Positions 1 to 17,956 of a stretch of DNA of 64,000 nucleotides are shown one piece after another; position 1 is the stretch's first letter, and each line of letters opens with the position of its first letter. A model generated the notes under the pieces. That model made no database searches. It was not told the DNA's origin and saw nothing but the letters and a program-made list of their open reading frames with translations. Position numbers and translations under genes: made by a program. This stretch comes from Asterias rubens (Eukaryota), in assembly GCF_902459465.1 (NCBI RefSeq), contig NC_047082.1:868001-932000 (forward strand), in the 5' to 3' direction.

Positions 1-1109
1 GCGTTAGTTTGGTGTACGTTTAGACCATGCTAAGACTAAAAGGACATTATTCCCGGCTCAATGGTGTACGCAAAGCTTGCCACCTTATTTATATTATTCC
101 GAGTTGTTAAAGCACAATTTTTACTAACACAATTTTGTATTATAATAAGTCTAATTAAAGTGTTGCATTCAAGGTACTAACAAAAGCCAAAAGCTGATGT
201 CATCAACGGGTACTTTCCGGGTACGTTCCCGGAACCAAAATACAAGTTGAGTTATTGTGAATTTGTACTCATGGCTGGCCAGTGGCCTATGCGCAGGCGC
301 GTTAGGGGTGCCTTTATTGCTGTAATCCACTGTTTTGTGTTACCTGGCAACTGATGCGTGTCCAGTAGGCGGCACAGTCATGGGCAAGGGCTGATTGACC
401 TCGAGTGATGGTGTGTTGTTACAGAGAATTATCCCCAAAAGGAAGGAATGTGATTAATTGTGAAAATGTTTAAAACTAAAGCCCTTGTGGTGTGCACCTT
501 ATAACGAAGCCAGTATGAATTGGGGTGTTTAGCTATCATGATTAATTTTGAGACTTTTTGTTTCCATTCCAACTCGATCCGCTTCATGTATGGGCCGTTG
601 AGGGCGTATGGTATGGTATTTATATGTGACCAGGGTTATAATATTAATTTGGCGAGGAAACGGCGTCTGCTTTTTTACCCCGTTAAAATTGTACAATGAT
701 CTCTGTCAATATGGCAGCACTCTTATTTTGTATTCAAAATATATTTATTAAACTTTAGATTGTTACTTTATTATTTAGAGTATATTTATTAACGTTTCTG
801 TCCAACAGTTTATTTAGAGACTTTTTTCTCTATTCCTACTCGAACCACTTCTTGCATGGGCCGTTGGGGGCGTGTATATATATTTATAAAACGGGGAATT
901 AGTGCTGAAAGTGTGCTCATAAAACGTATGATGCTTCTGCTGTTGCTGCCGCATGCTGTGGCTCAGCAGTTGCTTCTGTTTTTTATAATTTGTTGTTGTT
1001 TTGTTTTTTTGTTGGTTTTGTTTTAAGCGACGTCCCCGTTTGTGTTGTCTTATTTTTATTCAAAATTTGTTTATTCAGCTTTCGATTAAGATTTCTTTAG
1101 ATTTCTTTA

Positions 1110-1146
<37 letters not shown>

Positions 1147-1647
1147 TTATTACTATTTTTTAGACGTAGGGAACCCATTGGTACTTTTCAGAGACTTGAC
1201 TTTGTTATCTTTTTGGCCCTAAAGGGTAACTGGATACAATTGAAAGTACTATAACAACAAACAGCAAAAAAGCAAGATTTAATTAAACACAGATGGGCAC
1301 GAATATAGATTACGTCAACACAAGCAGATGTGGCAGAGCGTTTTGTGTGTGTCTAGATCGATGGGGTATAAAATGTAAAAAAAAGAAAAAAATATAAATG
1401 CTCCTGTGCTTCATCCCCCCCCCCCCCCAATCTCTGACCGAGTTATGGGTCTTTGGATGAAATTGTTGAGTTAATTTCTTCATTTATTCGTGTCCACATT
1501 TTATTCAAAACACAAATCTCATTCAAATTCACGCATCCCCCCCATTCCGCTCAAACCAGGCCATCTGTTTATCTTTTAATGCATTCAATTTCATGGACAT
1601 ATGATTTTGTTTTGTTCGGTCGGCTTCGTTTTGGTAATTCTGTTTCG

Positions 1648-2017
1648 TTAAAGCCATTATACACTTTCGGTAAACAGTATTGTCCAAGTCCCACACTTCG
1701 TGTATCACAACTTATATATAAAATAACAATCCTGTGGAAATTTAGGCTCAATCGGACATCGGAGTCGGGAGAAAATAACGGGAAAACCCACTCCTGTTTT
1801 CGCGCGTTTCGCCGTGTCATGACATGTGTTTATAACAAATCCGTAATTCTCGTTAACGAGAATTTATATTGTTTTACCGTTTTCTCAAAAAGTAAAGCAT
1901 TTCATGGACTAATATTTCAAGAGAAGTCTTTCACCATTACCTTCTGTAAACCCTATAAATTATTTGTAAATCTGTGAACTTTTTTTTTTCTGTACCGAAA
2001 GGGTCCAATGGCTTTAG
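1648..2017. mobile_element. Related TTAA-type MITE (different family)
   Basis: TTAA|AGCCATTATACACTTTCGG ... CCGAAAGGGTCCAATGGCT|TTAG; imperfect TIR; shares the internal GCTCAATCGG motif with the main family. Confidence 0.7.
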
Positions 2018-2199
2018 AAGGGCATTCAAGACTACACTTGGACAATGCTTTAATAGGTTGAATCTCTACTACATATTTGATGACATTGAATGGTTGTCCA
2101 GCCATTGGTGCTGGCTTTCGCGAAATAGAGTATCGCATCCTAATGAAATTGAATAATCTTATATTTTGACCAGAAAATGGCAATACTGGTGAAATTGAA

Positions 2200-2571
2200 T
2201 TAAAGACAGTGGACACTATTGGTAATTGTCAAAGATTTGTCTTCACAGTTGGTGTATCTCAACATATGCATAAAATAACAAACCTGTGAATAATTCAGCT
2301 CAATCGGTCGTCGAAGTTGCGAGATAATAATGAAAGCAAAAAACACCCTTGTCACACGAAGCTGTGTGCTTTCAGATGGTTGATTACGAGACCTCAAATT
2401 CTAAATCTGAGGTCTCGAAATCAAATTCGTGGAAAACTACTTCTTTCTCGGAAACTACGTCACTTCAGAGGGAGCTGTTTCATTTATAGTATCAACCTCT
2501 TCCCATTACTCGTTACCAAGTAAGGTTTTATGATAATTGTTTTGAGTAATTACCAATAGTGTACCATGCCT
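2200..2571. mobile_element. Same MITE family as 31126-31512
   Basis: TTAA|AGACAGTGGACACTATTGGTAATTGTCAAAG... with a collinear internal body; right TIR degenerate. Confidence 0.8.
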
Positions 2572-3379
2572 ATTTTATCGATAATTGTTTTTACCCTGCA
2601 AACCCGGAACATCTGCTCAACCAGAATCCACACTCACTAAGGCCAACATAAAATAATTCATTCTTACTCCAATCATCCGGCTGACAGGAGGCGTATTCTC
2701 AGGTAGGAATAATTCTGCTATTTTAGTATTTCAAAAAAAAATTCTAGGACAAGTTATATAGTTTCAGGTCTTGAACTTCGCTCTTGAAGGGGCACAGAAA
2801 TTTTCCGGTGGTAAGGGGCACTTCGGATTTGTATCGGAACTGTGCAAAGGGCACCACGGCAAAAGCACTTACCGGAGAGAAATGTATGTGCTGTTCTAAG
2901 AGAGAAGATGGAAGGCATGTACTGTTGTGTATGAGTCTGCCTAATATATTATATTTAAATAAAAAATTAAATAAAACAACTTTCAGACGCAGTATAGGCC
3001 TAGACCTTTAGGATTTGAAACTTTGCATGGTGGAAATACGATATGGGAAGGTTCGCGGTACGACCATGTAATGACTATAATCTCTAATGAATTGGGCAGG
3101 GTAGTTATGAATGCTCTGACTCCAGAAGACTCTCATTATCCATTCCAAATTATCAAGTTTTTGTAAATTCCTAAATAATGTTCTGTTAATTTTCCTTTTT
3201 GTTATCAACTCTCAATGTGTATTTATGGCTGCATAGCAAACGAATTTTTTAAAAACAGTTTAATTACAAACAATCATTGTTTTGTGTTATTTTTGCTGTA
3301 TGCACTATACCTTTCACCGTACCTTAATTTAAATAATCAATATTGTTATTGTTATAAACTAAAACCTATTAATTTACAT

Positions 3380-3525
3380 TATAAAGGGTCCAGGCTCTGT
3401 ATAAGCCCAGGCTTTTTCCTGGTGCCCTCCTCTTATCACTCGTTGTTCTTATTTCGTGTATGTTTCATGATTATTTATTGTGATATTTGGAAATAAAAAA
3501 CAAACAAACAAACAAACAAACAAAC
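3380..3525 (+). mobile_element. Probable LINE 3' tail ending in AATAAA-(CAAA)n
   Basis: TATAAGCCCAGGCTTTTT hairpin-like motif followed by a T-rich tract, AATAAA and a (CAAA)7 tail, typical of non-LTR retrotransposon 3' ends. Confidence 0.45.
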
Positions 3526-4362
3526 GATCAGAGCATACTGATCGAAACGTCGAGGTAAGGCCTAGACCTTTAATATATATATTTGCTTCGTTTTACTGCT
3601 GTGTGTTTTTGTTCATGTCGTCGTATTATATTAGGTTAACTAGTTGAAATAGGAAACTAAAGTATTATGGCCTTGAACTTATTGAAAATGTTTTTAACTT
3701 TCTTGTGACAGGATTTGAGCGCTATTTAAGAAGCCATTGTTACTATTTTAGTGAGTCGTATGCAAACAAAGCTTTTGGGAAAAATTCCGTTCCAATGCCC
3801 TCTATCGTTTGTAACCCCCGCCCCCCCCCCCCTAACTCGTATTGAGTGCCTTGGGGCGGATTGTGCCCGTACGGCGTTTATTATTGGCATTATATAGTTT
3901 TTTTTTTTTTTACGATTTCAGAAAATGTACTAGATATAAGAAAAAGCTGTTCCGTGTTTTTTGGTTTTTTTTATAAACTCTAGATCTTTAACGGGAGCTT
4001 CACTTCGAAGATACTTCACTATTAGTGCTATTCACACGACAGCAATTTAACTGAGGTCCCTTGCTTAATTTTAGCATGGTTGTAAAATGTAGCAGTGTTT
4101 GGAAAGATTTAAAAGAAAATTGTTGTCCTTTCACACGAGGCCAATTGTGTAAAAAATTTCCAACATGTTATAATTTAGCGTGGGACACTTGCTAAATTGC
4201 CCTTGTGTGAAAGGGGCATTTGGCCCGCCCTTCTTTTCTAATTTACCTTAACTCCACAAACCTAAAACCGGATCTTCATTCTGATATCCTGACTCTAAAA
4301 CAATTACATTTTCTCCTCAACCTCTTTCCCAGATAGAGTCAAGCTGTACATGTGGAGTAAAC

Positions 4363-5568
4363 ATGAGTTTGAGGTTGCGGAAACTTTGCTCTAAGCAGAG
4401 GTTATCCTTATTGGCCTGCTTACATGTGGCGCTGTTCATACTTTGTTACCTAAGTCTTTGGAGGACAGCTAAACCAGATGTGTGTGGAATCGTTTGTGCG
4501 ACGTCAGAGAAAGGTTCGTTAAAAAAAAACAGCCTTAAAGGAACACGTTGCCTTGGATCGGTCGAGTTGGTCTTTGAAAAGCATTTGTAACCGTTTGTTA
4601 TGAAATGCATATTGGTGGAAAGATGTTGTAAAAGTAGAATACAATGATCCACACAACCATGCCTCGAAATTGCGCGGTTTTCTTTTTACCTCGTCGACTA
4701 ACACGGTCAGCCATTTATGGGAGTCAACTTTTTGACTCCCATAAATGGCCGACCATGTTAGTTCGCAAAGTAACAGGAAAACCACGCAATTTCATTGTGT
4801 GGATCATTGTATTCTACTTTTAAAACATCTTTCTAACCATATACATTTTATAACAAACGGTTACAAATGCTTTTTATAGACCAACTCGTCCGATCCAAGG
4901 CAACGTGTAAGCACTTTATGTAATCCACCATATACATAAACTGACAAACCTGACGAGGTTTGAGATCGATCGGCCATCTGGGTCACGAGAATACATTACA
5001 TATTTTGCATGACATTGATGCAAAAAAAATTAGTAAAACGCCCACTGAGTGATAAACTCCAAAACGCAAAATTAAATTATTTATTCTCATCAAATATGAC
5101 ATTTCAGGCAGAAATATTTCAAGGGATGTTTTCTACTGTCATCATCATTAGACCGTGTAAGTTTAATGTAAATCTGTGATCTTCACGATTTTGTTGCTGA
5201 CCAACTCTGTAACGTTCCTTTAGGCCCGGTTCATATTTCACTGCAAAACTGGGGGTATTAAAACTGACTCTATGGGTGTTGTCACTCATAGATAAAGCAC
5301 TGACTATCAAAATTAACATCGTAGGGTGTTAAAAAAACACCAATGTAAGTTTTGTCTCAAGAATTTGTGTTACCTTAGCATCCTATGTGTACTTTTGTTA
5401 GTATTTATACGTGTGCTAATTTTGGCCCAAATAATATTTTGGTATAATGTGATTTTGTGGGGAATTCCGACCATTTAAGAGAACCAACTGCACATTTTCT
5501 CCTTTGCAGATACAAAGAAATCGCCTACAGATCAAGCGACTGGAGTGAAGGCTAAGCTGATTCCACAG
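4363..5568 (+). CDS. Probable N-terminal exons (type II signal anchor) of the sulfotransferase
   Basis: Exon 4363-4513 encodes MSLRLRKLCSKQRLSLLACLHVALFILCYLSLWRTAKPD... (basic cytosolic stretch then hydrophobic anchor) and ends AAAG|GTTCGT (phase 1). Exon 5510-5568 (tttgcag|...CAG|GTACTG, phase 1 to 0) encodes DTKKSPTDQATGVKAKLIPQ. Phase 0 fits the acceptor at 16478. Confidence 0.6.
4535..5223. mobile_element. Composite element: ~365-bp foldback palindrome fused to the 46268-type MITE body
   Basis: 4542-4907 is self-complementary around GGGAGTCAA-CTTTT-TTGACTCCC; 4905-5222 matches ~46315-46600; ends are TTAA and TTAG. Confidence 0.75.
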
Positions 5569-7072
5569 GTACTGTAACTATTCAACAATAATTTGTAACT
5601 TGCTTTCAAACATAAGTTGCCGCCGAACGTTGTCAACATTGCAACCAACCATGGGTTAATTTAACAAATGTCAATAATTTAGGAATGAAAACTGAACTTG
5701 CAGGATAAAATACATGCAATAGTATAATATTTATTTCATAAATAAATTTTTTGTCTGAGTAGTATATAACAATGCCACAATTAAGTTTAAATTTGTAATT
5801 CATCAAACGCACATTAGCTTTATAACAGATATAACATTTTAATTTGATTAATATTTATTTAACACAAAGCTTTTCCGTGTTGTTCACTTTAATTAATCGC
5901 TTCGGGTTTTTTCAGGTCAGCCCTAAATGTCGGAACAGCTTTTACATTGTTGACGCAAACAATAGATGTTCCGATTTATATGTCGGAACAGCTAAAACAC
6001 CTTAAAAGTATCATCCAGGATTCATAAATCAAAAGAGGTTGTTCAACTAAAGTGTGAAAGTTCACTGATAATGAGGTTCATTCTAACCCTGAATCCTGTT
6101 TTCTGAGAAATATTTCCCTTTAAAATGAAGTCACAATCGAGAAAACAATACAGAAAACCTCTAACAAAATGAATACCCGCAAGAGCTAGTAGTAGTTCGG
6201 CGAATTTTACAAGCTGTAAATTGTGTAAGATATTTCGCTATGTTTTTCCCGACTCGCATAACGGTTTGAGCCCAAATTTCCTCAGGTTTGGTCATGTATT
6301 TTAAAATATCTTTGAACAATCCGGAGAGAATAATTATGTCCATGAATATCTCCGAAAAATCCGAAGAGAATTATGTCAATACAGATTAATTCCTGACTCG
6401 ATAACACAATCTGAGTAACGTCACTGACAGTAACGCTTCTCAGATTCAAATTGTTAGAGCGCATGTAAAAGCTGATATGTGCATATGTACATAGGGTGCG
6501 TTCGATAAGCTTTCCTGGGTCGACCCCGGTCTGCCCCCGGTACGTTCCAATAACTTTGACGTCAATCCAGGGGCTCACCCGGGTCAGCCCCCAGTGCCCT
6601 GCTTGTAGAGTGGGTCACTTGGGGGCATGACGTCATCACGAGAGGGCGAGTGTGATAGTTCGATTAACTCTTGTCAGGGGCTCACCCGAGTGAGCACCGC
6701 GGGGTCGACCCAGGGAAGCTTATGGGATGCAACCATAGATACATAACTTCGGAGTAAAATGTTTCTCAAATTGCTTTTATCGAAAGCTGCTTTATATAGG
6801 CTTTTAACCAACATGTTGTATTGCCGATAACTTTAAGAGTGGTTACCAAACATGTACATTCCATTTATGCACAAAGAGTAGTTCAACACAAAAATAATTT
6901 CGCTTACTACAATAGGGTAAAGGTACCACGTCACACGTGCAGTTCAGACTGATTTCCTGCTAACTTTGGCTTAGCAGTTAACTATTTACCCTCATCCGAG
7001 TTTCAGCTCAGGTACGACTGTGGTTTAAAACATAAACTTGCATACAAGTCCAATCATTAAGTTGTGTATCCA

Positions 7073-10000
7073 CTATCGCACGCTTGGTCTTGGTAGGCTT
7101 TGATGAGAGGACTGAGGCAAGCGGTCAAAGTCTACCACAGAGTTAAGTGTGTAAACTTGATTAAAGTTTGGTGCGCCAGCGTAGATGTTTTCATGCGAGG
7201 CGTGTCTTTGGATTGCCCCGTTTGGTGACCCACGGGCCAGTGCTCTTTGGTTTGACCCATGCACTACTGACTCACGGGCCATTGTTCTGTGGTTCGCCCC
7301 ATTTGGTACTACTGACCCGTTAGGCACTACTGACCGGCGGTCCACTGCTCTTTGGTTGTGACCAAGAGATCCATATCTGTCATATTGTTCCCGGGTCACA
7401 TGGTTATCGTGTGGCCAAAGGGAGCCGGATGTTCTCCTGTGACCCTGAGGTGTGGACCTGTTACGATGGCTGGTGCGAGGTTCTGGAACACCGTACTGCC
7501 CGGTAGGGATATGACCATTGGTTTGAGTTTTGTTGTTCTGCACAAGAAAAACAGATCCCTCTAGAGGAGCAGCATCGACAAGACCCCTACTGATAGTCTG
7601 GACTCTTTCTTCAGTGACAATATGTCTTGCAAGTGGGTTATCATGACTCTGAGTAACGGCGGACCTATGGGCCGGTTTGACCTTAATAGCTTTCTTGGGC
7701 TTCTCGCCCAGCCTGCAGCATTCACAGCATGGCAGGCAAGGTACGTCGCCACAACTCCCTTGCGGACCAATTGTAATGCAAAGAGTTTGAAAGAAGAAAG
7801 TTCCATGACTCCAGCTGACACTGACTACGAGCATTAGGAAGACTCCGAACTGGTAGTAGATGAGTACCGTAGCGGGCAGCACCAGAGCCCCTGCAATGAA
7901 GGTTGATAGAGCGGCTATTGTGATAGCAGCCGTCATGGTTGTTAATGAGTAGCGAGTACGTTGGTCACGATCCGAGCTAGGAGAGAGCTTGAATGCCACA
8001 CCGTAGTGAATGGTGAAATCAACTGATAACCCAACAGCCAACGTGATGATAGTCGCTTCGATGATATTCAACTCCCATCCAAGAAGAACGAGGCTAGCTA
8101 CTGTTACAAAAACAGCACTTGTTATTGTAACCATAGCGCAAATTGTTATCAAGACATTCTGGATGGTCAGGAGTAGGATTCCGGATGCTATCGCCAACGT
8201 AATGACCATAGAGATTTGTGTTCCGGATGCAAGACTCTGCTGAAGATCGTAGAATAAAAGTCCGTAGTTGAGTTTGGAAATAAACCATCCATTCTGTAAT
8301 GGATCCGGGGCTGAGCTGATCTTCTCTTCCATCCAGGGATTTACGGACTGCCAGAATTCATCATTTGATTCATACAGAAAAGTATAAGGATATTGTGTGG
8401 TGAATGTGACTCCAATAACTGCGAGTTCCGAGTTATTTCTCCGGAAGTAAAGATCCGGGAAAAGGCCATTGGTTGCGAACGCGTTGAGACAGACGTCAAA
8501 GAGAGCGGGGTCATACGGGAAATCAACTTGGTTGCAGCAGGGGGATACGTCTTGGTTTGTACAGCTCAATTCCATGTAGTATTTGAAATTTTCAATGAAG
8601 CATCTCACTGGTTCATCCGGATTGACAAAGCTTTGGTTACGGAGCTCTGCGCAGAAGTTCAGCATCCACGTTTGGTGTTCCGGCTCGTAGAACTGGAAAC
8701 TATCGTCTAGAGCTAAAGTTCCAGAATCGCCAGGTTTCCAGTGATTCCCGTTATCCACAGCCTGGACGCCCCAGATGATGGTACCATCGGCATCAGGAAA
8801 ATTCTCCTCACTGAACGAGAACTGATCTTTGTAAACAAAATCGTACAGTTCAAAAGGGTGGGAGCTTGCAAAGAACTGAAATTCAGCTTGGGAAGGAAGT
8901 TGAAACCCTGGTTGGAAGAATATTACAACAGCGCCACCTATCATCAACAGTGTGAAAATGGTTATCCATAGATATCTAAGTTTACTCACTAAGAATGGGA
9001 TAACGCGCTCAAAAATTACTGTGATCGGTTTGAACAAAATGTTTAGACAACTCGTGCATTTCGTTTCAGTGTTGGGTGTTGAACGCTGCGATTTTGATCC
9101 ACAGCAGCAGACGGCTATTTTATGTTGCATAACGATGACGGCAGGCAACAGCGTCAGAGTCAAGACCAGGTTCATCATGATCGAGGTACCAGCGAAAACA
9201 GCGAAGCATTTGACCACTGTGATGTCACTGATGACGGTAGCAAAGAGTGCAGCTGCTGTAGTCACACTTGTAACGAACATCGTGACCGAAGCATGACGTA
9301 ACGTCTCATAGACAAGTAGTGGCAGGTCCTCGATACCAAGCTTTGCCCTCGACTGCTTCCATAAGTCCATAAACACAAAGGTGTCGTCAGCACCGACGCC
9401 TATAATCAAGATCACGGTCATGAAGTTCCCAAACGGAAAGAAGGGTCTGCTGAAGACAACAGTGAAGAAAAAATACCCAAGGACCAATGAGAATATCATG
9501 TTGAAAAGTGCCGCAAGGGTAACCAAAAACGACCCGGTGTACACCCAGATTAAGAGGAAGATGAGGCCTATCCCAATGCCCATGTACAGACTATCTGCGA
9601 AGAGGTTCGAGGAAAACAGTCTGAATTTGATGAAGAACTCCACAGCCTTGATTGTTGTGATCCCATCTTCGTATGCAACTGGCATAATGTTCTCCGTAAA
9701 GATGGTCTCTAAGGTGTCTCTCTGGTGGCTGTATATCGGGTAAAACACGGCAGTGATTTGACTCTCTAATGGTGTCACGCCGTCTAGTATACCCTTGGTG
9801 AAAACTGCCGGTAGAAGATAATACAGCACAGTGTGGACAGCAAAGTTATGTTGACTGCATTCAGCAGGGATCGAACCGGGTACGGCATACTCAAACTCAC
9901 GCTCTGACCGCGTTCCGTTGTGCACAAACTTTGCGCATCGTTGAAGTAAAGCCATAGTGGATGCAACATCCTCGTCCGATATATCCGCACACGATGACTT

Positions 10001-13000
10001 GTTAGAGAACAGTGCTATGTAGTTACCTAAAGACCATGTGCTAGGGCATGCTCTGTCCGTGTAGGTACCGACACAGAGGCAGTTCGCCGTGAACGAGGGA
10101 TGGGTCGTGACGAGCCGTTCCCCGGTAGTGCAAACCGATTTGATTGCCGACGTTGTGAGCATGTTTCCGCCGTCTACTGTCTCAAACACAATGACGGGAA
10201 CAAACTCGCCCCAATATTCTGTACACACAAAAGAAGCACAAACAAAATGCAATTATTGTGATAATTCCACTGTCTCCTTGGAAACTATTCAAACAGTGAC
10301 GTAGGGGCGCAATGGATTGATTGGCAGAAAAGAAGTTTCTTATAGACCTTATCGCAAATACCAATGCGCAAGCGCAGACTATTGAATGAGGTGCATTGTG
10401 GGATAGATATGGATAAAATTTTGATACCAGCTGGACCACAATGCACCTAATTCCAAGCTTTACGCGCGCGCCCCAGTATTTGCGAAAAGGTCTATGTCGA
10501 GTTGTGACGAGTTACTACTCATAACTTTTGGACTATTTTTGTGCTATCGACCCCAGAATTTGTTTAATTTTTATTATTGTGTTAAGCTTCTTTGAGTGGA
10601 CACTTTCAGATCGTGCACTTTTTTAATGCTACAAAAATAACATGTGGTTGGAGATATTGGTTACTGTGAACTTACCAATGGAATAACAAAACTGGACACC
10701 AGCATCGGCTCCGATCTGTCGTTTCACTCTTGTTTGGCTCTTGTCTACCGCTAGAGGGCGAGACATCACTAGGTCTTCATCATCCACAAGGTTTCCGAGA
10801 CTTACAAAACGTGATGTTATTATGGTACCACGCGTCTCGAAGCCCTGTGGAGAACATAGTATAAAGAATTAATCAAAAGTGTTATTGAAGAGAAACCAAC
10901 AAGTGAATAACCTGAGGAACTTAGCATGGTTTATGTCAGTGTCCGTGCAATATTATGACCACGAACACCTCTTGTTATTGTCATGGGTGGTTTTTGTTTT
11001 CGTCTCCATCTTCTTCTTCTTCCCTGGAAATCTTATCTAAATTGAACCTTGAAACTCATTAGACAATTGTACCTCTAAGACTCCTCAAATTCCTAAGCCA
11101 CATAGGACAAATTTTAATGCATGAATTTATCAAGTCTCCCCATTAGTTGACGCACAGAGGCCCAATGTTCGGGTTGTTATATTATTGTATATTCAAGAGT
11201 ATAACTTTAGGTTTACAATATTTCAAAACCATAGATGTGATTATAATTTTATAAGATGTGTTGATCGTTGCCAGTTGTGCGTTTATATTCTCTTTTGAGA
11301 GCTTTGCCGAGTTTCATTGTTAAGAAATCATAACAATAAACAAACAAACAAACAAACAAACAAACAAACAGACAAAAATCCAATAACACAATTTACCTCC
11401 GAGGGGTTTGAAAAGTCCGGAAGCTCGTACGCTGTCAACGACAAAGCGGTGTACGCCCCCACCGTCAGGAAAACGAGCAGGCAGATCACGTACCAGAAAC
11501 GGGCCAGGATCCTCGAATACCTGCACGTGATCGAAATCAATAACAAAGTCTTGGTCATGTTACATCAAAAAGAACCCCCTCTACGTTACACCATAAATCA
11601 TGTTCTACAGTCTTAAAGTAACTGTATTCCCTACGGATTGAGAAAAACCTTGTTTTGTTTTAATGGAGGCGGTCATTAAAATGATTTACGAGGAAGACAA
11701 TGCGTTACTTTGTAATTTGATTCCGGTTAGACGCACTCAATATTATTGCGAAGAACATAAACATAGGTTTGCAAAACCCACAAATCAATTTAAGAGAATG
11801 CTTTAGTCAATAAATAAATAATAAAATAAGTAATCAGGTGATCAATACTGTTTCTTTTGATAACAAATAATCGGTTTTCTTAAGTAGGAGCCACTGTTTC
11901 AAGTTTTGCATTGACGGTTTTGTGGTTTTGGTTTTGGTAATCAATTTAATAGATGTTTAATGTTCACCGGGGATAAAGAATATTATCAAATCGTTACAAT
12001 ACTCGCTGCTAAAACTGAGGATTCGAACTGCCTCTATACTATAGCTACCGGGCAATCTCGGTGGTCTAGTTGGTTTGACACTGCTCTAGAACTTTGCAAA
12101 GGTCGTGGGTTCGAATCCCATCCGAGTAATATATACGCCTGTGATTTTGCTCACAGAACTTGGGAAAGAACTGAGTTTACAATGCCACACATCGGTGTAT
12201 TATGGATAACACCAAAATGAATGTTGAGTATCAATTTACAAGGTATTTTGTTTATTAATACGCGTAATTTGATGTGAATTTCCTTGGTGTGATCGATTTG
12301 AAATTCTGGGTCTTGAATATTATTTTTTTTCGCCTAAAAGTTGTTGTTTTCTTTATTATTGAATAGATAAAGAAAGAATATTAATTTTGTATTATTAATT
12401 TTGATTTTACCCCTATACACATTGGTGTTTATGGGTAAAACTACATAATAAAAATACATTTGAGCTTTAATATCCAAAGGTATTATTTTAACTGTGACAG
12501 ATTGGATAAAAGGTTTGAGGTCGTGACGGTAGTTGACAATATCTTAGTCCCATACAATGTTTCATCCAGGGTAGTGGAATGTTCTTGCATCCGGGTACCA
12601 CCCACGAGCTAAATGTAGGATTGGTAATGTTCGAAAACAACTTAAAGGGAAGGTATAGACCTTTATCACGGTGTGGCCATCTTGACTTTACTCCAATCCA
12701 ACTCATTATAACCAAACTGAGGCTGGACGAAATATTAGTCTGGTGCCATGTTTGCGCAAAGAATGTTAGCATTCATTACTGTGATAGAAACAGGGAATAT
12801 GACCAAGATGGTGACAGCGTGAAAAAGGTCTATACCATTGGTAAGCACACTAAAAATGAACGGCAAACAAATTAACTTTGTTTAAAAGCCTAGTACAGGA
12901 GATTTCGATAGTATAAAGCATTTTGAGAAACATTTCACTTCGTAAGTAATTTCACTTCGTAAACCTGACGAAGACTAGAGCAAGCTAGTCCAAACGTTGA

Positions 13001-15499
13001 GACCAATTCAAGAACTGACTCCGCGGACGTGCAGTTATTTACGACCCTGAAAGCTATTGAAGTAGTAGTCCCATCCAACCTTCCGCCCAGGTAATAGTTA
13101 ACCAGCAGGACAGTTCTTTTCACAACTGAGAAGTCTCCCGAACATCCGATAAATCTACTCCGCGGTAGTAGAATAAAGAAAGACAGTTCTCTAAGAACAA
13201 ACTCTACCTGACATGAGTTACCACAAACCAGTAATTAATGTGGTTATGCAAAAATAATTGTAAAGAATTTGAAACTGAGAAGCGTTACTGTCAGTGACGT
13301 TTCTCAGTTTGTGTATTCCTATGGGGGATAATTCTTCCAGCCTGGACTTATTTGCACCGGATTTTCAAAGGTTTGCCTTTAGACAGCCCACTCATTACAA
13401 AGTCTATATACAAAAACTCGTCCTTAACAACAACATCGCCCCCAACAAAGTTGCCTTCTGCGACACTGGCGGGAGGGGGGGGGGGGGGGCGGGCGACTTT
13501 GTAGGGGCGAGCTTGTACATGGAGGAGCGAGCTTGCTGGGGGCGACTTCGCAGGGGGCGACTTTGTAGGGGGCGACTTTGCCGGGGGCGAGATGACTGAC
13601 AATCAATACAACCACCCAAAGAAAAAACTTCTGTCTGAGAAAACTCGGACCCAGATCTGCGAAGTGTTTGGCAACACAATGGGAATAATTTCCCATGGTC
13701 TAAACAGAGCAGGTGCTATATTTCAACGGTTTTGCCGTAAATCTCCGTGGAATTAAGTTAGTGCGTCCACTTCACAGCGAGGGCCTACAAATTATAACAA
13801 CCATGTTGACAATCTGGTTTATGGAAATGAGGTACGATGCATAGCCTGGGGTGTTTAAATTCACACCATGGATGCAGATACATATATATACAGAAAAGAT
13901 ACAAAACATAAGGTGTTGAAATAGAATTTCTGCCAGAAACAAATTCATTATTTTTGTGTTTTTTGCACACCCTCTTTGTTAATATTTTGCTTTTGTCTTC
14001 GGTATCTTAATGTAACAACACCAGGAGCAAGTTCGATCAAGGGACTATAGTTGACTTTTGTTGACCATTGGGCGATTTTGCCTGGTACCCAGGATGTATT
14101 TCATGCAAAGGTAATCATGGAACATTGACTATGACGATTGCTGATCGAACTTGCCCATGGTGTCAATTTGAACTCGGTTTTTGCATTTTATATTCGACTT
14201 TTTATGCAAGCTTTCATATCTTTTCTTTTTCACATGGAAATACCAGTTACGTCAATCAGCAAAGCTATTTTTGTCGGCTTCCCTATTTATCTTAGACCCC
14301 TGAATAATATGGCGCTGGTTGCTGCGACTTCTTGCTGTTTTTTGTATTTGTGTGTGTTGACTGACACGTTGTAAGGGGCGCCTGTTTGGGTATTCTTGCG
14401 GGATTCCCCTCAAAACTACCTCATAGCGGGATAGAAAATGAATTTGCTCAAACAATTTATGGTGATACAAATTTACTTGGTAAGAACATGAATAAAAGAA
14501 GAAGTATAGCAGTGTGAGGTAGTATATCTTTGAGAAATTGTTCACTTCGAAGTAGTGTTGTTATGGAAAAAGATATCTTTTTGTTCTACCCCGTCCCCCA
14601 AATTTTGAATCTGAGAAGCGTTACTGACAGTGGCGCTTTTCAGAGTGTGGTTAACGGATAGTTGTTATCGCACAGCTAGTGTTGTTAATGGTCAAAGGTC
14701 AGTGGCCACACTTTGTGTGGCTCTAAGTTATACATGAAATAAACACCTGTTGAAGTTTTAGCTCAATCGGTCATCAGCGTCAGAAGAACATAGCGAAGAA
14801 AATAAATCAACGTTTTCACTGTTTTCAAAGATAATGTTCATACACATGTTCATACACACCTAGAGCGTTAAAGGCAAACATACTTCTAGGAAAGTTTGCC
14901 TATGCCCATCTTTATACCAAGTTATGATCAAATAATTGTGTGCATATTTTCAAGCTCAAGTTACAAGGTGTAGAGGGAAAATCATAATATGCTTGAATTT
15001 TAAATATAGTATTTGGGAAAACGTTCCGTATCCTGCCAGCACCTTTTCACTCATTCTTACGAAAAGGAATATCTCATTTGATTGAGTTAGATACAATTTA
15101 AATTCATAACGAATAAAATAATGGTGGCAGGATCCGGAAGTGTGTCCAGTATTTGTAGCAACAACAAAACGCTTGCAATTCAATTAAATCACACATGGAT
15201 GCGCCCACACTTGAATCAACAAAGCGATATTAGTCACCAATGATTCATATCGATTTATGGTAAAACATGTATTTTCCTTCCTCCTTGGGTAAACATTACT
15301 GAACCGCACTATCTAATACACGGTTGACCCACTAAATCGTTAACAAACTATTGATCATCGCAAATACTTACATAAAGCAAACACCACCAGGTCGTGGCCG
15401 TTCATCCATGCCGTCACTTTGACGTTTCACACGGCGTGGATCTCCGTGCGAATCCCGCAAACGATCACTGTTCCCGGAAGCTCTACGTACACTCGTCAT
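7073..15499 (-). CDS. DISP1: Protein dispatched homolog (RND/sterol-sensing-domain Hedgehog release protein), 4 coding exons, ~1188 aa
   Basis: Exons (-): 15499-15372, 11520-11397, 10844-10676, 10218-7073. All introns are GT-AG and phases are consistent (128+124+169+3146=3567 nt). Contains ELPDFSNP/GFETRGT after TM1, RVKR before the conserved FC, TWSLGNYIAL, SSD TM4 GVGADDTFVF and TM10 GLSVDFTIHY, matching vertebrate DISP1/2 landmarks as I recall them. Confidence 0.93.
12042..12230 (+). mobile_element. tRNA-derived SINE family 1; copies at 27316-27645 (+, dimeric), 35995-36172 (-), 51170-51322 (-) and 56310-56465 (-)
   Basis: Pol III A box TGGTCTAGTTGG and B box GGTTCGAATCC, followed by a conserved non-tRNA body (GTGATTTTGTTCACAGAACTCGG...CCAAAATTAATATT). 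Confidence 0.8.
12681..12842 (+). repeat. Dispersed repeat shared with ~48980-49142
   Basis: CCAACTCATT...TCTGGTGCCATGTTTGCGCAA..ATGTTAGCATTCATTACTG...CCAAGATGGTGACAGCGTGA occurs at both sites. Confidence 0.75.
12963..13230 (+). mobile_element. Penelope-like non-autonomous remnant with degenerate hammerhead head; related copies at ~30904-31060, ~41240-41400 and ~62670-62860
   Basis: CUGACGA-A-GACUAG(AGCAAG)CUAGUC-CAAA-CGUU at 12965-12998, followed by a shared body (ctactccgcggtagtagaataaag..acagttctctaagaacaa) found in four places in both orientations. Confidence 0.55.
13490..13597. repeat. ~15-bp GC-rich tandem array (GGGGGCGACTTTGT)n; short related copies at ~38409 and ~39421
   Basis: Read directly. 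Confidence 0.8.
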
Positions 15500-16477
15500 G
15501 TTATCAATATCTTATTTTGTTAAAGACACTGTCTCTTGAATCATGGAGGAAGAAAACTAACACTGCACGCAAAAGTACACCGACTATCAGGGTATAACGT
15601 GTGTGAACATGCACATCAATATCATAAGTCATGATATTAATGATGCCACCGAACCCCTGTTGTTTCAAAATGAAGACTACATTATTTCTGAGCAGGATAT
15701 ACAGTTATTCAATACCAGACTTATTTCCGTAATGTTGGTGTTAGTTATTGCTCCATGCATAGAGCAAACTCTAGACGTTAGACAAGTACCAGTGCGTACC
15801 GCCGTACTGCAGTCGTACACGCACTTTATGTGTACACCTGTGTCATACAGTTCCAGTACACGTGAGACGCACCCAGGTGGAACGGTTGTGCAAGCAGACG
15901 TGGAATAAGTGAAAGTAGAAGGAAATGACTGGACATTATTTTGTTCGTCGAGGGTCTTTTGTAACCTATTATTTGACGAGAACATACATGTTGTATTATA
16001 AAGAAAGGACATCTTTGTAACCTAACAAATACTAAGCCGGGCTGATGGTTTTTTTCAAGGGGCATAATCCTAAATTAATTGCCTCGCTTTCATATCGAAT
16101 GAGCATGCTACAAAAAGTAATGAGCAGTTTTCCGTCATCGAAGTACGCTCATTTATATAGTTGTAAACAGCTTGACATTTTCATAACAATAATAATAGCC
16201 CCTCTAGCACAAAGCGCTTCACAGAAGCTAGACAGAAATAGAATAGTCATTTGTTGGCTTTGAGTTCAGCAACCCGTAAGCCAACTGTTAACGGGACCGA
16301 TTATTTGTCTGTTTGCTTAGGATTTTCAATTATGACTGGTGCTGGTCTAGGGTATTTTGGCAATTTCATGGTAAACACGTCTACGTTTGATACTGACTGA
16401 ATCTGATTTTGTAAATATTTTTTTTAATAAAATTGTAGTTTATTTATTCATGATTGTTATTATTTTTTATTTTGCAG

Positions 16478-17956
16478 GTTGATGTAACCAGTGGCCGGGA
16501 CCAGTCTTTGACACTGCGTCACCACAATGACCTCAAAGCAGACGATATGAGGTATACTAACAAACAGGCATCGCTAAACGAATTGAGGTACAACCGAGGG
16601 ACTGTATCTAACGAGAAGAGGTACGAGAATGCAAAAACCTCACCAGCTGAGTCTGATACTAGACCAAAACTGGAGAGAGATAGAACCTCTCCAACTGGAT
16701 CTAGACAGGGTGAAGATGATACCTCTAGGAGTAGACCTCTGCCGGAACACATCCAAGGTGCCACCACAACTTTACCTAAGCAAGAAAGTGCAACCACAAC
16801 TAGACCTAAGCACGACCAAGGTGCTACCACAACTAGACCTAAGCACGACCAAGGTGCTAACCCAACTAGACCTAAGCACGACCAAGGTGCTAACCCAACT
16901 AGACCTAAGCACGACCAAGGTGCTAACCCAACTAGACCTAAGCACGACCAAGGTGCTACCCGAACTAGACCTAACAGTACCTCTCTACCAGTAGCCTCAC
17001 AAGACAAAAACTCAACAATGAACTCCTCGACAAAAAAGCAGAACAAAAGCACCAATATCGTAAACAATGAGGGTTACATGCAATTAAATTCGTCTCTGTA
17101 TGAAAAGTGGACGCAAGAGCAAGAGTTGAAAAAGAAACACGTCCAAGATACATGTAAGTCCCTCCGGAGTGATTCCAGGTCAGCCAACCTCAAATATGAC
17201 CTAACTGAAGCGGTACTCAAAACACTCAACCATCTCCTAGTAGTGGACTCGCACAAAATCATTTACTGCTACGTTCCGAAAATCGGATGTACAAGCTGGA
17301 AGCGGATTCTTCTGGTGTTACTTGAGAAAATTAAAAGAGTCGAGGATGTTTCCCACATGGGTGCACACTACACACCAATTCCAAACCTATCAAAGTTCAC
17401 TCTAGACGAAGTAAAACAGCGATTAAGAAACTACACCACTTTCATGATCACAAGGGATCCGGTCGAGAGGGTGGTTTCATGTTTCAGGGACAAATTTGAG
17501 AAGGACAATCCGGACAACCGTGCCTTACAACGGAACGTCATGCCGGGCATCCAGGGTAAATCCGGTAACTATAACAAATCCGACAAGATCCTGCCCAAGG
17601 TTGACTTTCCACAGTTTGCACGGTACGTCTCTGACTCCCAGAACATTTTCGGTAACTACGGACCGACGGAACACTGGAACGAGGTGTATAAAATGTGCCA
17701 TCCCTGCTTGGTGAGGTACGACTTCATTGGGGAGTTCGATAAGCTGACCCGGGACTCGGAACTCATTTTGAAGGCAACGGGACTCGAAAACACCGTGAGG
17801 TTTCCGAAGGCAACGAACCCTACCAATAGCTCCGGCGATTCCGTAACGAATAAATATTTATCGTTATTGAATAAGACAGAGATCACTGCTCTTAATAAGA
17901 GATATGAAATTGATGCCGAGTTATTTGGGTATTCCGATCAACCAGTGCCGCTTTAA
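16478..17956 (+). CDS. Carbohydrate sulfotransferase (HNK-1ST/C4ST, CHST8-14-like Sulfotransfer_2 family): stem plus catalytic exon
   Basis: Strong acceptor ttttgcag|GTT at 16477/16478 (phase 0). 5'-PAPS-binding CYVPKIGCTSWKR, 3'-phosphate-binding ITRDPVERVVSCFRDK and C-terminal CHPCLVRYDFIG. No signal anchor in this exon, so upstream exons are required. Confidence 0.9.
   Translation, partial: VDVTSGRDQSLTLRHHNDLKADDMRYTNKQASLNELRYNRGTVSNEKRYENAKTSPAESDTRPKLERDRTSPTGSRQGEDDTSRSRPLPEHIQGATTTLPKQESATTTRPKHDQGATTTRPKHDQGANPTRPKHDQGANPTRPKHDQGANPTRPKHDQGATRTRPNSTSLPVASQDKNSTMNSSTKKQNKSTNIVNNEGYMQLNSSLYEKWTQEQELKKKHVQDTCKSLRSDSRSANLKYDLTEAVLKTLNHLLVVDSHKIIYCYVPKIGCTSWKRILLVLLEKIKRVEDVSHMGAHYTPIPNLSKFTLDEVKQRLRNYTTFMITRDPVERVVSCFRDKFEKDNPDNRALQRNVMPGIQGKSGNYNKSDKILPKVDFPQFARYVSDSQNIFGNYGPTEHWNEVYKMCHPCLVRYDFIGEFDKLTRDSELILKATGLENTVRFPKATNPTNSSGDSVTNKYLSLLNKTEITALNKRYEIDAELFGYSDQPVPL
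16754..16974 (+). repeat. Coding 33-bp tandem repeat (TRPKHDQGANP, ~6.5 copies) in the sulfotransferase stem
   Basis: Unit ACTAGACCTAAGCACGACCAAGGTGCTAACCCA is read directly; central copies are identical and 5' copies degenerate. Confidence 0.92.

What the first reader, a model, noticed from the sequence alone, without database searches (positions are those of the whole stretch)
4363..17956. Dispatched appears nested antisense inside an intron of a carbohydrate sulfotransferase
Seen: the sulfotransferase catalytic exon (16478) lacks a signal anchor. A classic type-II anchor exon (4363-4513) and a phase-compatible 59-nt exon (5510-5568) lie 11 kb upstream on the same strand, and the whole DISP gene (7073-15499, -) sits between them. 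Established: Dispatched releases lipidated Hedgehog, and sulfated glycosaminoglycans modulate Hedgehog spread. Inference: a nested gene pair that may be co-regulated or subject to transcriptional interference; any functional link is speculative.
Basis: partly seen in the sequence, partly recalled or inferred. Interest (0 to 1): 0.72.

Follow-up and report, generated by a model that had tools for sequence, protein, structure and literature searches.

The report
Dispatched-like gene nested in sulfotransferase intron
In the starfish Asterias rubens a Dispatched-family transporter gene does sit backwards inside a 10.9-kb intron of a Golgi sulfotransferase gene, but this is an ordinary nested gene pair that the public annotation already contains, and the inner gene is not the canonical Hedgehog-releasing Dispatched.

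Summary
The window is Asterias rubens. A four-exon, 1188-aa Dispatched-family gene (15499 to 7073, -) lies wholly inside intron 2.

Spliced RNA contigs from four studies confirm two of the three inner-gene introns. RNA libraries that hold exon 3 also hold exon 1. Three of four libraries have no RNA over the proposed proximal exon (16332-16370), and its GT donor is lost in A. amurensis.

The same nesting is annotated in A. amurensis. It is probably present in Acanthaster and absent in Patiria, where the genes are convergent neighbours.

I never saw the 5568/16478 junction itself in reads.

The Hedgehog link weakens. A. rubens has six Dispatched-family loci, and vertebrate DISP1 groups with a different one, on contig C1. 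The window's copy belongs to a clade found here only in sea stars and a brittle star. The host enzyme is one of at least 25 Sulfotransfer_2 paralogues, and no other one sits beside a Dispatched-like gene.

Nested genes are common in animals. Interest is low. This scan had only the same first-reader note on this stretch.

The parts
4363..4513 (+). CHST exon 1, coding part. It encodes the basic N-terminus and a type-II signal anchor (hydrophobic at residues ~12-35) and has a phase-1 donor. The exon probably begins at or before the conserved acceptor at 4332/4333.
   Evidence: It is 96% identical to A. amurensis against 86% in the flanks, with splice sites kept.
5510..5568 (+). CHST exon 2, 59 nt, which restores phase 0.
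   Evidence: It is 95% identical to A. amurensis, and the AG and GT sites are conserved.
5569..16477 (+). CHST intron 2 (10,909 nt), which hosts the whole DISP-like gene on the opposite strand.
   Evidence: The region is collinear with A. amurensis L016:40378-51293.
16478..17956 (+). CHST exon 3. It encodes a hydrophilic stem with a mucin-like repeat, then the Sulfotransfer_2 catalytic domain with the PAPS-binding motifs PKIGCTSW (residue 337) and RDPVERVVS (residue 396), then the stop.
   Evidence: Pfam PF03567, E = 6.7e-49, covering 2-252 of 252 profile positions. Motifs. Held by RNA runs at 0.8-0.93 of sampled words.
16753..16974 (+). 33-nt tandem repeat, 6.8 copies, encoding 11-aa Thr/Pro-rich stem repeats (..TRPKHDQGA..).
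   Evidence: The A. amurensis stem is 102 codons shorter.
7073..10218 (-). DISP-like exon 4. It encodes most of extracellular domain 1, the sterol-sensing domain with GVGADD, extracellular domain 2, the second transmembrane bundle with GLSVDF, the C-terminal tail and the stop. The 3' UTR reaches about 6694.
   Evidence: It is 97.5% identical in protein to the nested A. amurensis gene. Record 22 of run X8 gives the 3' extent.
10676..10844 (-). DISP-like exon 3, which contains an R-V-K-R furin-type site in extracellular loop 1.
   Evidence: Joint 10843/11396 in four runs..
11397..11520 (-). DISP-like exon 2, encoding transmembrane helix 1.
   Evidence: Joints 10843/11396 and 11517/15369, each with CT..AC ends, in four runs. 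100% protein identity to A. amurensis.
15372..15758 (-). DISP-like exon 1. The CDS is 15499-15372. The 5' UTR reaches at least 15598, 15662 and 15758 in X1, X7 and X6. In X8 one contig runs on to 16526.
   Evidence: table 8..
16332..16370 (+). The rival 'proximal first exon' (ATG ... ATG|GTAAAC). It is not supported.
   Evidence: Depth in the bin 16270-16469 is 0, 0 and 0.66 in X1, X6 and X7. Only unspliced continuous cover is seen in X8. The GT donor is replaced by AT in A. amurensis. It encodes no hydrophobic anchor.

Best explanation
This is an ordinary nested (host/guest) pair of protein-coding genes in Asterias rubens.

The host is a three-exon gene for a type-II Golgi carbohydrate sulfotransferase of the Sulfotransfer_2 family (PF03567). 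I recall this as the CHST8-14/HNK-1ST group, which I did not test. Exon 1 supplies the membrane anchor, a 59-nt exon 2 restores the reading frame, and exon 3 supplies a repeat-rich stem and the catalytic domain. To make the mRNA, polymerase must cross a 10.9-kb intron 2 (inferred, not observed).

That intron contains, on the other strand, a complete four-exon gene with its own promoter region (about 15.6-16.4 kb). It encodes a 1188-aa Dispatched-family RND/sterol-sensing-domain transporter. Both genes are intact, transcribed, spliced and under purifying selection.

The guest is not the orthologue of DISP1. It is one of several DISP-like paralogues that tend to occur in tandem arrays in the sea stars and the brittle star sampled.

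The CHST/DISP-like neighbourhood is old within sea stars. I infer that the nesting arose by local rearrangement or by duplication and loss around a tandem DISP-like array, not by selection for a shared function.
For: Shown:
- The gene model equals RefSeq XP_033644685.1.
- A. amurensis has the same annotated structure. Its CHST isoforms X1 and X2 both join exon 2 to exon 3 across a 1188-aa antisense gene at L016:41882-50259.
- CHST exons 1 and 2 are 95-96% identical between the two species against 86% in the flanks, and all splice sites are kept.
- RNA contigs from four studies are spliced at two DISP-like introns.
- Exon 1 and exon 3 of CHST are held by the same RNA libraries X1, X6 and X7.
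- There is no RNA over 15870-16469 in three of four libraries.
- The donor of the proximal rival exon is lost in A. amurensis.
- dN/dS is 0.23 for DISP-like and 0.41 for CHST exon 3.
- The DISP-like protein aligns to solved DISP1 over residues 9-836 at E = 1.7e-198, with GVGADD and GLSVDF conserved.
- Vertebrate DISP1 groups with A. rubens C1:10.18 Mb at 100/99 support, not with the window's gene.
- Synteny: Patiria has three tandem DISP-like genes, then a convergent CHST. Acanthaster has the catalytic exon, then a DISP-like gene, then a homologue of CHST exon 1 in the same phase.

Established knowledge: nested genes are the commonest protein-coding overlap in animals, involving nearly 10% of Drosophila genes (PMC3814207, PMC5174743).
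Against: - No read or contig crossing the 5568/16478 junction was displayed.
- A search for transcript-derived protein fragments spanning the junction found nothing.
- Run X8 holds exon 3 but was not listed as holding exon 1. It also has one contig running unspliced from DISP-like exon 1 across the CHST acceptor to 16526, so some exon-3 RNA may not come from the distal promoter.
- The RefSeq models are predictions, and I could not inspect their supporting evidence.
- The DISP tree puts the Asterias and valvatid copies in order-specific clades. This does not prove a single ancient origin of the nesting.
Confidence: 0.85

Rival explanations
1. The genes are head-to-head neighbours, not nested. 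The catalytic exon would be transcribed from a proximal promoter or first exon just upstream (about 16270-16370) or from within exon 3. Exons 4363-4513 and 5510-5568 would then be a separate short transcript or a false extension of the prediction.
For: A short ORF with a GT donor exists at 16332-16370 in phase 0. Run X8 shows continuous unspliced cover from 15369 to 16526 and was not listed as holding exon 1. Exon-3 contigs in all four runs begin at 16497 or 16515, not at 16478. The junction was never seen.
Against: Depth in the bin 16270-16469 is 0, 0 and 0.66 in X1, X6 and X7, while the exon-3 bin has depth 9-66. The GT donor is not conserved in A. amurensis. The 13 residues encode no anchor, so the enzyme would lack Golgi targeting. 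Exons 1-2 are conserved above background with intact splice sites and matching phase, and are expressed. Two independent RefSeq annotations join them to exon 3. Patiria and Acanthaster have a homologous anchor exon.
Confidence: 0.06
2. The nesting is functionally meaningful. The host and guest would be co-regulated, or mutually exclusive through transcriptional interference or antisense RNA, because the DISP-like exporter and the sulfotransferase act in one pathway of lipid-modified morphogen release and spread.
For: The CHST/DISP-like adjacency is kept in three sea-star genera from two orders. Nesting is kept in Asterias and is probably present in Acanthaster. Both genes appear in the same RNA libraries. 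The guest keeps the transporter Asp motifs and a furin-type site in loop 1. That Dispatched releases lipidated Hedgehog is established (PMC9695228). That sulfated proteoglycans affect Hedgehog spread is my recollection, not checked here.
Against: The guest is not the DISP1 orthologue. The host is one of at least 25 paralogues, and no other CHST/DISP-like pair exists in the genome. Patiria has un-nested genes and the Amphiura locus has no CHST. From memory, untested here, this sulfotransferase family acts on chondroitin/dermatan and terminal GalNAc or GlcA, not on heparan sulfate. Contig depth cannot measure co-expression. Studies of nested genes disagree on whether nesting changes expression (PMC5174743, PMC8467205).
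Confidence: 0.07

Closest known systems
Nested (host/guest) protein-coding gene pairs in metazoan introns, for example the roughly 10% of Drosophila melanogaster genes in such structures (PMC3814207, PMC5174743, PMC8467205)
   Same: A complete gene with its own promoter lies inside a long intron of another gene on the opposite strand, which I recall as the commonest orientation. The coding exons do not overlap.
   Different: The guest here is large (8.4 kb of CDS span, four exons, 1188 aa) and fills most of the intron. The commonly described case is a short, young duplicate in a long intron. The pair is conserved between two Asterias species and probably in Acanthaster.
Dispatched homolog 1 (DISP1; solved structures 6xe6, 7rph, 7e2g) and Drosophila Dispatched (6tbu)
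   Same: It aligns end to end over both transmembrane bundles and both extracellular domains (E = 1.7e-198). The sterol-sensing domain, the TM4 GxGxDD and TM10 GxSxDF acidic motifs and a furin-type R-x-K-R site in the first extracellular loop are all present.
   Different: It is only 37% identical to zebrafish DISP1, against 47% for the A. rubens locus at C1:10.18 Mb, which is the one that groups with vertebrate DISP1. It belongs to a clade that here contains only sea-star and brittle-star sequences, often in tandem arrays. This resembles the extra 'Dispatched/Che-14 family' members reported in annelids (PMC9695228). No function has been tested.
CHST8-14 / HNK-1 sulfotransferase family (Pfam PF03567 Sulfotransfer_2): chondroitin and dermatan 4-O-, GalNAc-4-O- and HNK-1 sulfotransferases. 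These family members are named from memory.
   Same: It has the type-II topology, a full-length match to the Pfam domain and both PAPS-binding motifs. The nearest named vertebrate proteins are CHST11/12-like at 29-32% identity.
   Different: It has a long, hydrophilic, repeat-containing stem of about 200 aa that varies in length between the Asterias species and is absent from the Patiria and Acanthaster orthologues. Substrate is unknown. It is one of at least 25 paralogues in A. rubens.

Membership tests
Nested gene pair (guest wholly within one intron of the host) | All guest exons lie between two consecutive host exons. | tested here: met
   The DISP-like CDS is 7073-15499. Its transcript spans about 6694-15758 in three of four runs. 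The host intron is 5569-16477. One X8 contig reaches 16526, a possible 49-nt overlap with host exon 3.
Nested gene pair (guest wholly within one intron of the host) | The host exons on either side are joined in a mature mRNA. | tested here: inconclusive
   Supported indirectly by the RefSeq models in two species, co-presence of exon 1 and exon 3 in RNA libraries, conserved splice sites and phase and failure of the proximal rival. No junction-spanning read was displayed.
Dispatched family (RND/SSD transporters) | Twelve-helix RND architecture with a sterol-sensing domain and two large extracellular domains. | tested here: met
   Pfam PF12349 at 1.5e-10 and PF02460 at 4.1e-08. It aligns to DISP1 chain 6xe6_A over query residues 9-836. 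Hydrophobic clusters fall at the expected places.
Dispatched family (RND/SSD transporters) | Conserved acidic residues in TM4 (GxGxDD) and TM10 (GxSxDF) needed for ion-coupled transport. Their essentiality is my recollection, not checked here. | tested here: met
   GVGADD at residue 414 and GLSVDF at residue 870, aligned to GIGADD and GLSVDF of DISP1.
Orthologue of DISP1/Disp (the Hedgehog-releasing Dispatched) | It groups with DISP1/Disp to the exclusion of the other paralogues of the same genome. | tested here: not met
   Vertebrate DISP1 groups with A. rubens C1:10.18 Mb (100/99). The window's gene is in a separate 16-row sea-star and brittle-star clade. The zebrafish DISP1 BLAST score is 859 bits to C1 against 686 bits to the window. 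Caveats: midpoint root, and no DISP2, DISP3 or Drosophila sequence in the tree.
Orthologue of DISP1/Disp (the Hedgehog-releasing Dispatched) | It releases cholesterol-modified Hedgehog. | not testable with these tools
   This needs a secretion assay or a knock-down.
Sulfotransfer_2 (CHST8-14/HNK-1ST) Golgi sulfotransferases | Full catalytic domain with the 5'-phosphosulfate and 3'-phosphate PAPS-binding motifs. | tested here: met
   PF03567, E = 6.7e-49, profile positions 2-252 of 252. PKIGCTSW at residue 337 and RDPVERVVS at residue 396.
Sulfotransfer_2 (CHST8-14/HNK-1ST) Golgi sulfotransferases | Type-II membrane topology: short basic cytoplasmic tail and a single N-terminal anchor. | tested here: met
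   The only 19-residue windows with Kyte-Doolittle mean of 1.6 or more span residues 12-35 (maximum 2.34), after the basic start MSLRLRKLCSKQR. All of this is encoded by exon 1.
Sulfotransfer_2 (CHST8-14/HNK-1ST) Golgi sulfotransferases | Substrate specificity (chondroitin or dermatan GalNAc-4-O, terminal GalNAc, or GlcA-3-O). | not testable with these tools
   The protein is only 29-32% identical to named vertebrate CHST11/12-like proteins. An enzyme assay is needed.

The most novel reading that the evidence does not exclude
The CHST/DISP-like host-guest arrangement predates the split of Forcipulatida and Valvatida. It would have been kept because transcription of the sulfotransferase through the antisense DISP-like gene, or a shared regulatory region at 15.5-16.5 kb, couples the two. 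That would make a regulatory module linking a lipid-ligand exporter paralogue to matrix sulfation in sea stars.
Probability: 0.08. Interest if true: 0.5.

Novelty: new member of a known kind. Interest (0 to 1): 0.2.

Why it matters
The main value is as a check. A reader working from raw sequence alone recovered the exact RefSeq exon structure of a gene whose anchor exons lie 11 kb from its catalytic exon.

Biologically the pair is one more nested gene pair. Three modest points go beyond the annotation:
- The 'Dispatched' here is a lineage-specific paralogue, so Hedgehog inferences should use the C1 locus instead.
- The sulfotransferase/DISP-like neighbourhood is conserved across sea-star orders, with three different local arrangements. 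This gives a small natural series for studying how nesting arises and is lost.
- The Acanthaster sulfotransferase model is probably truncated, because its anchor exon lies beyond a nested DISP-like gene.

Tried and rejected
1. Direct junction evidence. The single read-laying run covered 10670-16669 with four runs. It confirmed DISP-like splicing, but printed only 24 of 331 loose-end rows, none at 16478. Exon-3 contigs begin at 16497 or 16515, probably at breaks in the assembly graph. The junction could not be read.

2. Transcript-derived protein fragments spanning exons 1 to 3. The query P0001:1-160 returned no hits. This says little, because candidate lengths are restricted.

3. The look-up of encoding contigs for P0001 and P0002 returned no record. 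Own-genome records are withheld, and only the longest isoform is indexed. Isoform X1 (P0138), found through, solved this for A. amurensis.

4. P0018 (A. amurensis, 81% identity) first looked like the orthologue of the guest, and its locus has no CHST. It proved to be the counterpart of the A. rubens C21 paralogue. The true orthologue is the 1188-aa gene in L016.

5. Relics of a second catalytic exon between the guest and CHST exons 1/2, which would support an origin by duplication and loss. Nothing was significant. The best match was a 17-aa stretch in Acanthaster at E = 0.08.

6. Recurrent CHST/DISP pairing elsewhere in the A. rubens genome: none found.

7. CHST next to the DISP-like array in the brittle star Amphiura: none within the 27-kb locus.

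8. Literature on Dispatched in sea stars: nothing specific.

Full report
**What the window is.** A search with the large plus-strand ORF returned a 100% identical, 562-aa RefSeq protein, 'carbohydrate sulfotransferase 9-like [Asterias rubens]' (P0001, XP_033644685.1). The window is contig C22:868001-932000 of that assembly.

**Checking the observation: the host gene.**
- The sequence shows an ATG at 4363 and a donor after 4513 (AAAG|GTTCGT).
- It shows an acceptor before 5510 (TTTGCAG|ATAC), a donor after 5568 (CACAG|GTACTG) and an acceptor before 16478 (TTTTGCAG|GTTGAT).
- The exon lengths of 151 and 59 nt sum to 210 nt, so exon 3 is entered in phase 0.
- Joining the three pieces gives exactly P0001.
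- P0001 has one hydrophobic segment, at residues about 12-35, preceded by a basic tail. All of it is encoded by exon 1.
- Exon 3 carries a hydrophilic stem with a 33-nt, 6.8-copy tandem repeat. It also carries a complete Sulfotransfer_2 domain (PF03567, E = 6.7e-49) with both PAPS-binding motifs.

**Checking the observation: the guest gene.**
- A 1059-aa ORF on the minus strand matches the sterol-sensing and Patched families.
- It aligns to solved DISP1 structures at E = 1.7e-198, with the TM4 and TM10 acidic motifs conserved.
- Homology located three upstream exons.
- RNA contigs then fixed the boundaries, giving exons 15499-15372, 11520-11397, 10844-10676 and 10218-7073. The product is 1188 aa without internal stops.
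- All of it lies inside CHST intron 2 (5569-16477).

**RNA evidence.**
- Four runs from four studies were laid on 10670-16669.
- All four are spliced transcript assemblies. They carry the joints 10843/11396 and 11517/15369 with CT..AC ends, which are GT..AG on the minus strand.
- One 4973-nt contig in X8 contains the whole DISP-like mRNA down to about 6694.
- Exon 3 of the sulfotransferase is covered in all four runs.
- The 600 nt upstream of it (15870-16469) has depth of about 0-4 in X1, X6 and X7. Within that, the 16270-16469 bin, which holds the proposed proximal exon at 16332-16370, reads 0, 0 and 0.66.
- The junction 5568/16478 itself was not displayed.
- A search for transcript-derived protein fragments spanning the junction found none.
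- In X8 a contig runs unspliced from DISP-like exon 1 to 16526, across the host acceptor. This is either a long alternative 5' UTR of the guest or host pre-mRNA merged by the assembler.

**Comparison with A. amurensis.**
- In this species (L016) the CHST gene is annotated with two isoforms. Both join the orthologous exons 1 and 2 to exon 3 across an antisense 1188-aa gene.
- The last exon of that gene is 97.5% identical in protein to the window's.
- The two loci are collinear throughout.
- CHST exons 1 and 2 are 96% and 95% identical, against 86% for flanking non-coding sequence. All four splice sites, and the acceptor at 4332, are kept.
- The GT donor of the rival proximal exon is AT in A. 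amurensis.
- dN/dS is 0.23 for the DISP-like gene, 0.41 for CHST exon 3, and 0.59 for exons 1-2, where there are too few sites to interpret.

**Comparison with other echinoderms.**
- In Patiria miniata the orthologous CHST (P0003, 307 aa, two exons) lies convergent to three tandem DISP-like genes and just downstream of them. It is not nested.
- In Acanthaster planci the annotated CHST is a single 288-aa exon. It begins at what looks like an acceptor and has no anchor.
- In Acanthaster a homologue of Patiria exon 1 lies at L018:20901-21039 on the same strand. It starts MQRFTRKK, continues with a hydrophobic stretch, and ends in a CAG|GTGAAT donor in phase 1, the same phase as Asterias exon 1.
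- That exon lies beyond the 3' end of the DISP-like gene P0028, which sits between it and the catalytic exon.
- A further DISP-like 3' end lies upstream of the Acanthaster catalytic exon.
- Acanthaster therefore probably has the nested arrangement too. This rests on homology alone, with no RNA evidence.
- Patiria and Acanthaster are both Valvatida and Asterias is Forcipulatida. One loss of nesting in Patiria is therefore more parsimonious than two gains.
- The DISP tree, however, shows order-specific clades, so independent origins or gene conversion cannot be excluded.
- I found no significant relic of a duplicated catalytic exon.
- The brittle star Amphiura has a tandem DISP-like array without a CHST in the 27-kb locus examined.

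**What the guest is.**
- A. rubens has six Dispatched-family loci.
- Zebrafish DISP1 matches the C1:10.18 Mb locus best, at 47% identity and 859 bits. The window's gene scores 37% and 686 bits.
- In a maximum-likelihood tree, vertebrate DISP1 groups with the C1 locus at 100/99 support. The window's gene sits in a separate clade of sea-star and brittle-star sequences.
- Its closest paralogue, on C21, carries an in-frame stop. That paralogue's A. amurensis counterpart is flagged low quality.
- This matches reports that invertebrates have one Disp orthologue plus several Dispatched/Che-14-family members (PMC9695228).
- The tree is midpoint-rooted and lacks DISP2 and DISP3, so its deeper placement is provisional.

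**What the host is.** It is one of at least 25 Sulfotransfer_2 paralogues in the genome. None of the others lies next to a DISP-like gene. The nearest named vertebrate relatives are CHST11/12-like at about 30% identity. I know those enzymes as chondroitin 4-O-sulfotransferases, but that was not tested here. Substrate is unknown.

**Verdict.** Nested antisense genes are common in animals (PMC3814207, PMC5174743, PMC8467205). The proposed Hedgehog connection loses its main support, because the guest is not the DISP1 orthologue and the pairing is unique among many paralogues. Transcriptional interference remains possible in principle but is untested. Both genes are detected in the same bulk libraries, and contig depth cannot rank them.

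Noticed in passing
window 15369-16526 (-): In run X8 one 4973-nt contig joins DISP-like exons 4, 3 and 2 to an exon 1 that runs on unspliced to 16526, 49 nt into CHST exon 3. This is either a long alternative 5' UTR that overlaps the host exon in antisense, or host pre-mRNA merged by the assembler. X8 was not listed among the holders of CHST exon 1.
   Followed up: partly
window 16548-16974; L016:51360-51485: The CHST stem is very variable. A. rubens has about 6.8 copies of a 33-nt repeat encoding an 11-aa Thr/Pro-rich unit, plus about 93 further residues that are missing from A. amurensis. Exon 3 differs by 102 codons, in frame.
   Followed up: partly
window 11870-13270 and 14070-14670 (DISP-like intron 1): RNA contig word depth reaches 10^4-10^5, with many odd joints and loose ends. 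These look like copies of highly repeated, transcribed interspersed elements inside the guest's first intron.
   Followed up: no
G000:C21:7473316-7476165 (L005); A. amurensis L003:10001-35905: The closest paralogue of the guest (82% identity) has an in-frame TAG in A. rubens. Its A. amurensis counterpart (P0018) is flagged LOW QUALITY, with a frame shift near L003:34220 and a 22-kb first intron. This is probably a decaying duplicate shared by both species.
   Followed up: partly
L018:6602-7468 (-) and L018:20901-21039 (-), Acanthaster planci: The annotated 288-aa sulfotransferase starts at an internal Met just before a probable acceptor and lacks an anchor. The homologue of Patiria exon 1 lies 13 kb away, beyond the DISP-like gene P0028. 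The public model is probably truncated.
   Followed up: partly
L019/L002 (Patiria), L020 (Amphiura), L018:1-336 (Acanthaster): DISP-like genes of this clade occur as same-strand tandem arrays: three in Patiria, three in Amphiura and at least two in Acanthaster.
   Followed up: partly
L001:10001-10118 (Patiria CHST exon 1): Downstream of the annotated phase-0 donor, Patiria keeps a GTGAGC donor homologous to the Acanthaster one and in phase 1. This hints at an unannotated isoform with a small second exon, as in Asterias.
   Followed up: no
one search hit list: Neither A. rubens' own DISP-like protein nor the 97.5%-identical 1188-aa A. amurensis orthologue appeared among the hits, although both are within the length range. 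This is unexplained.
   Followed up: no
window 4535-4908 (CHST intron 1): This roughly 370-nt element matches the A. amurensis locus in both orientations and at several places. It is probably a short repeat with inverted symmetry.
   Followed up: no
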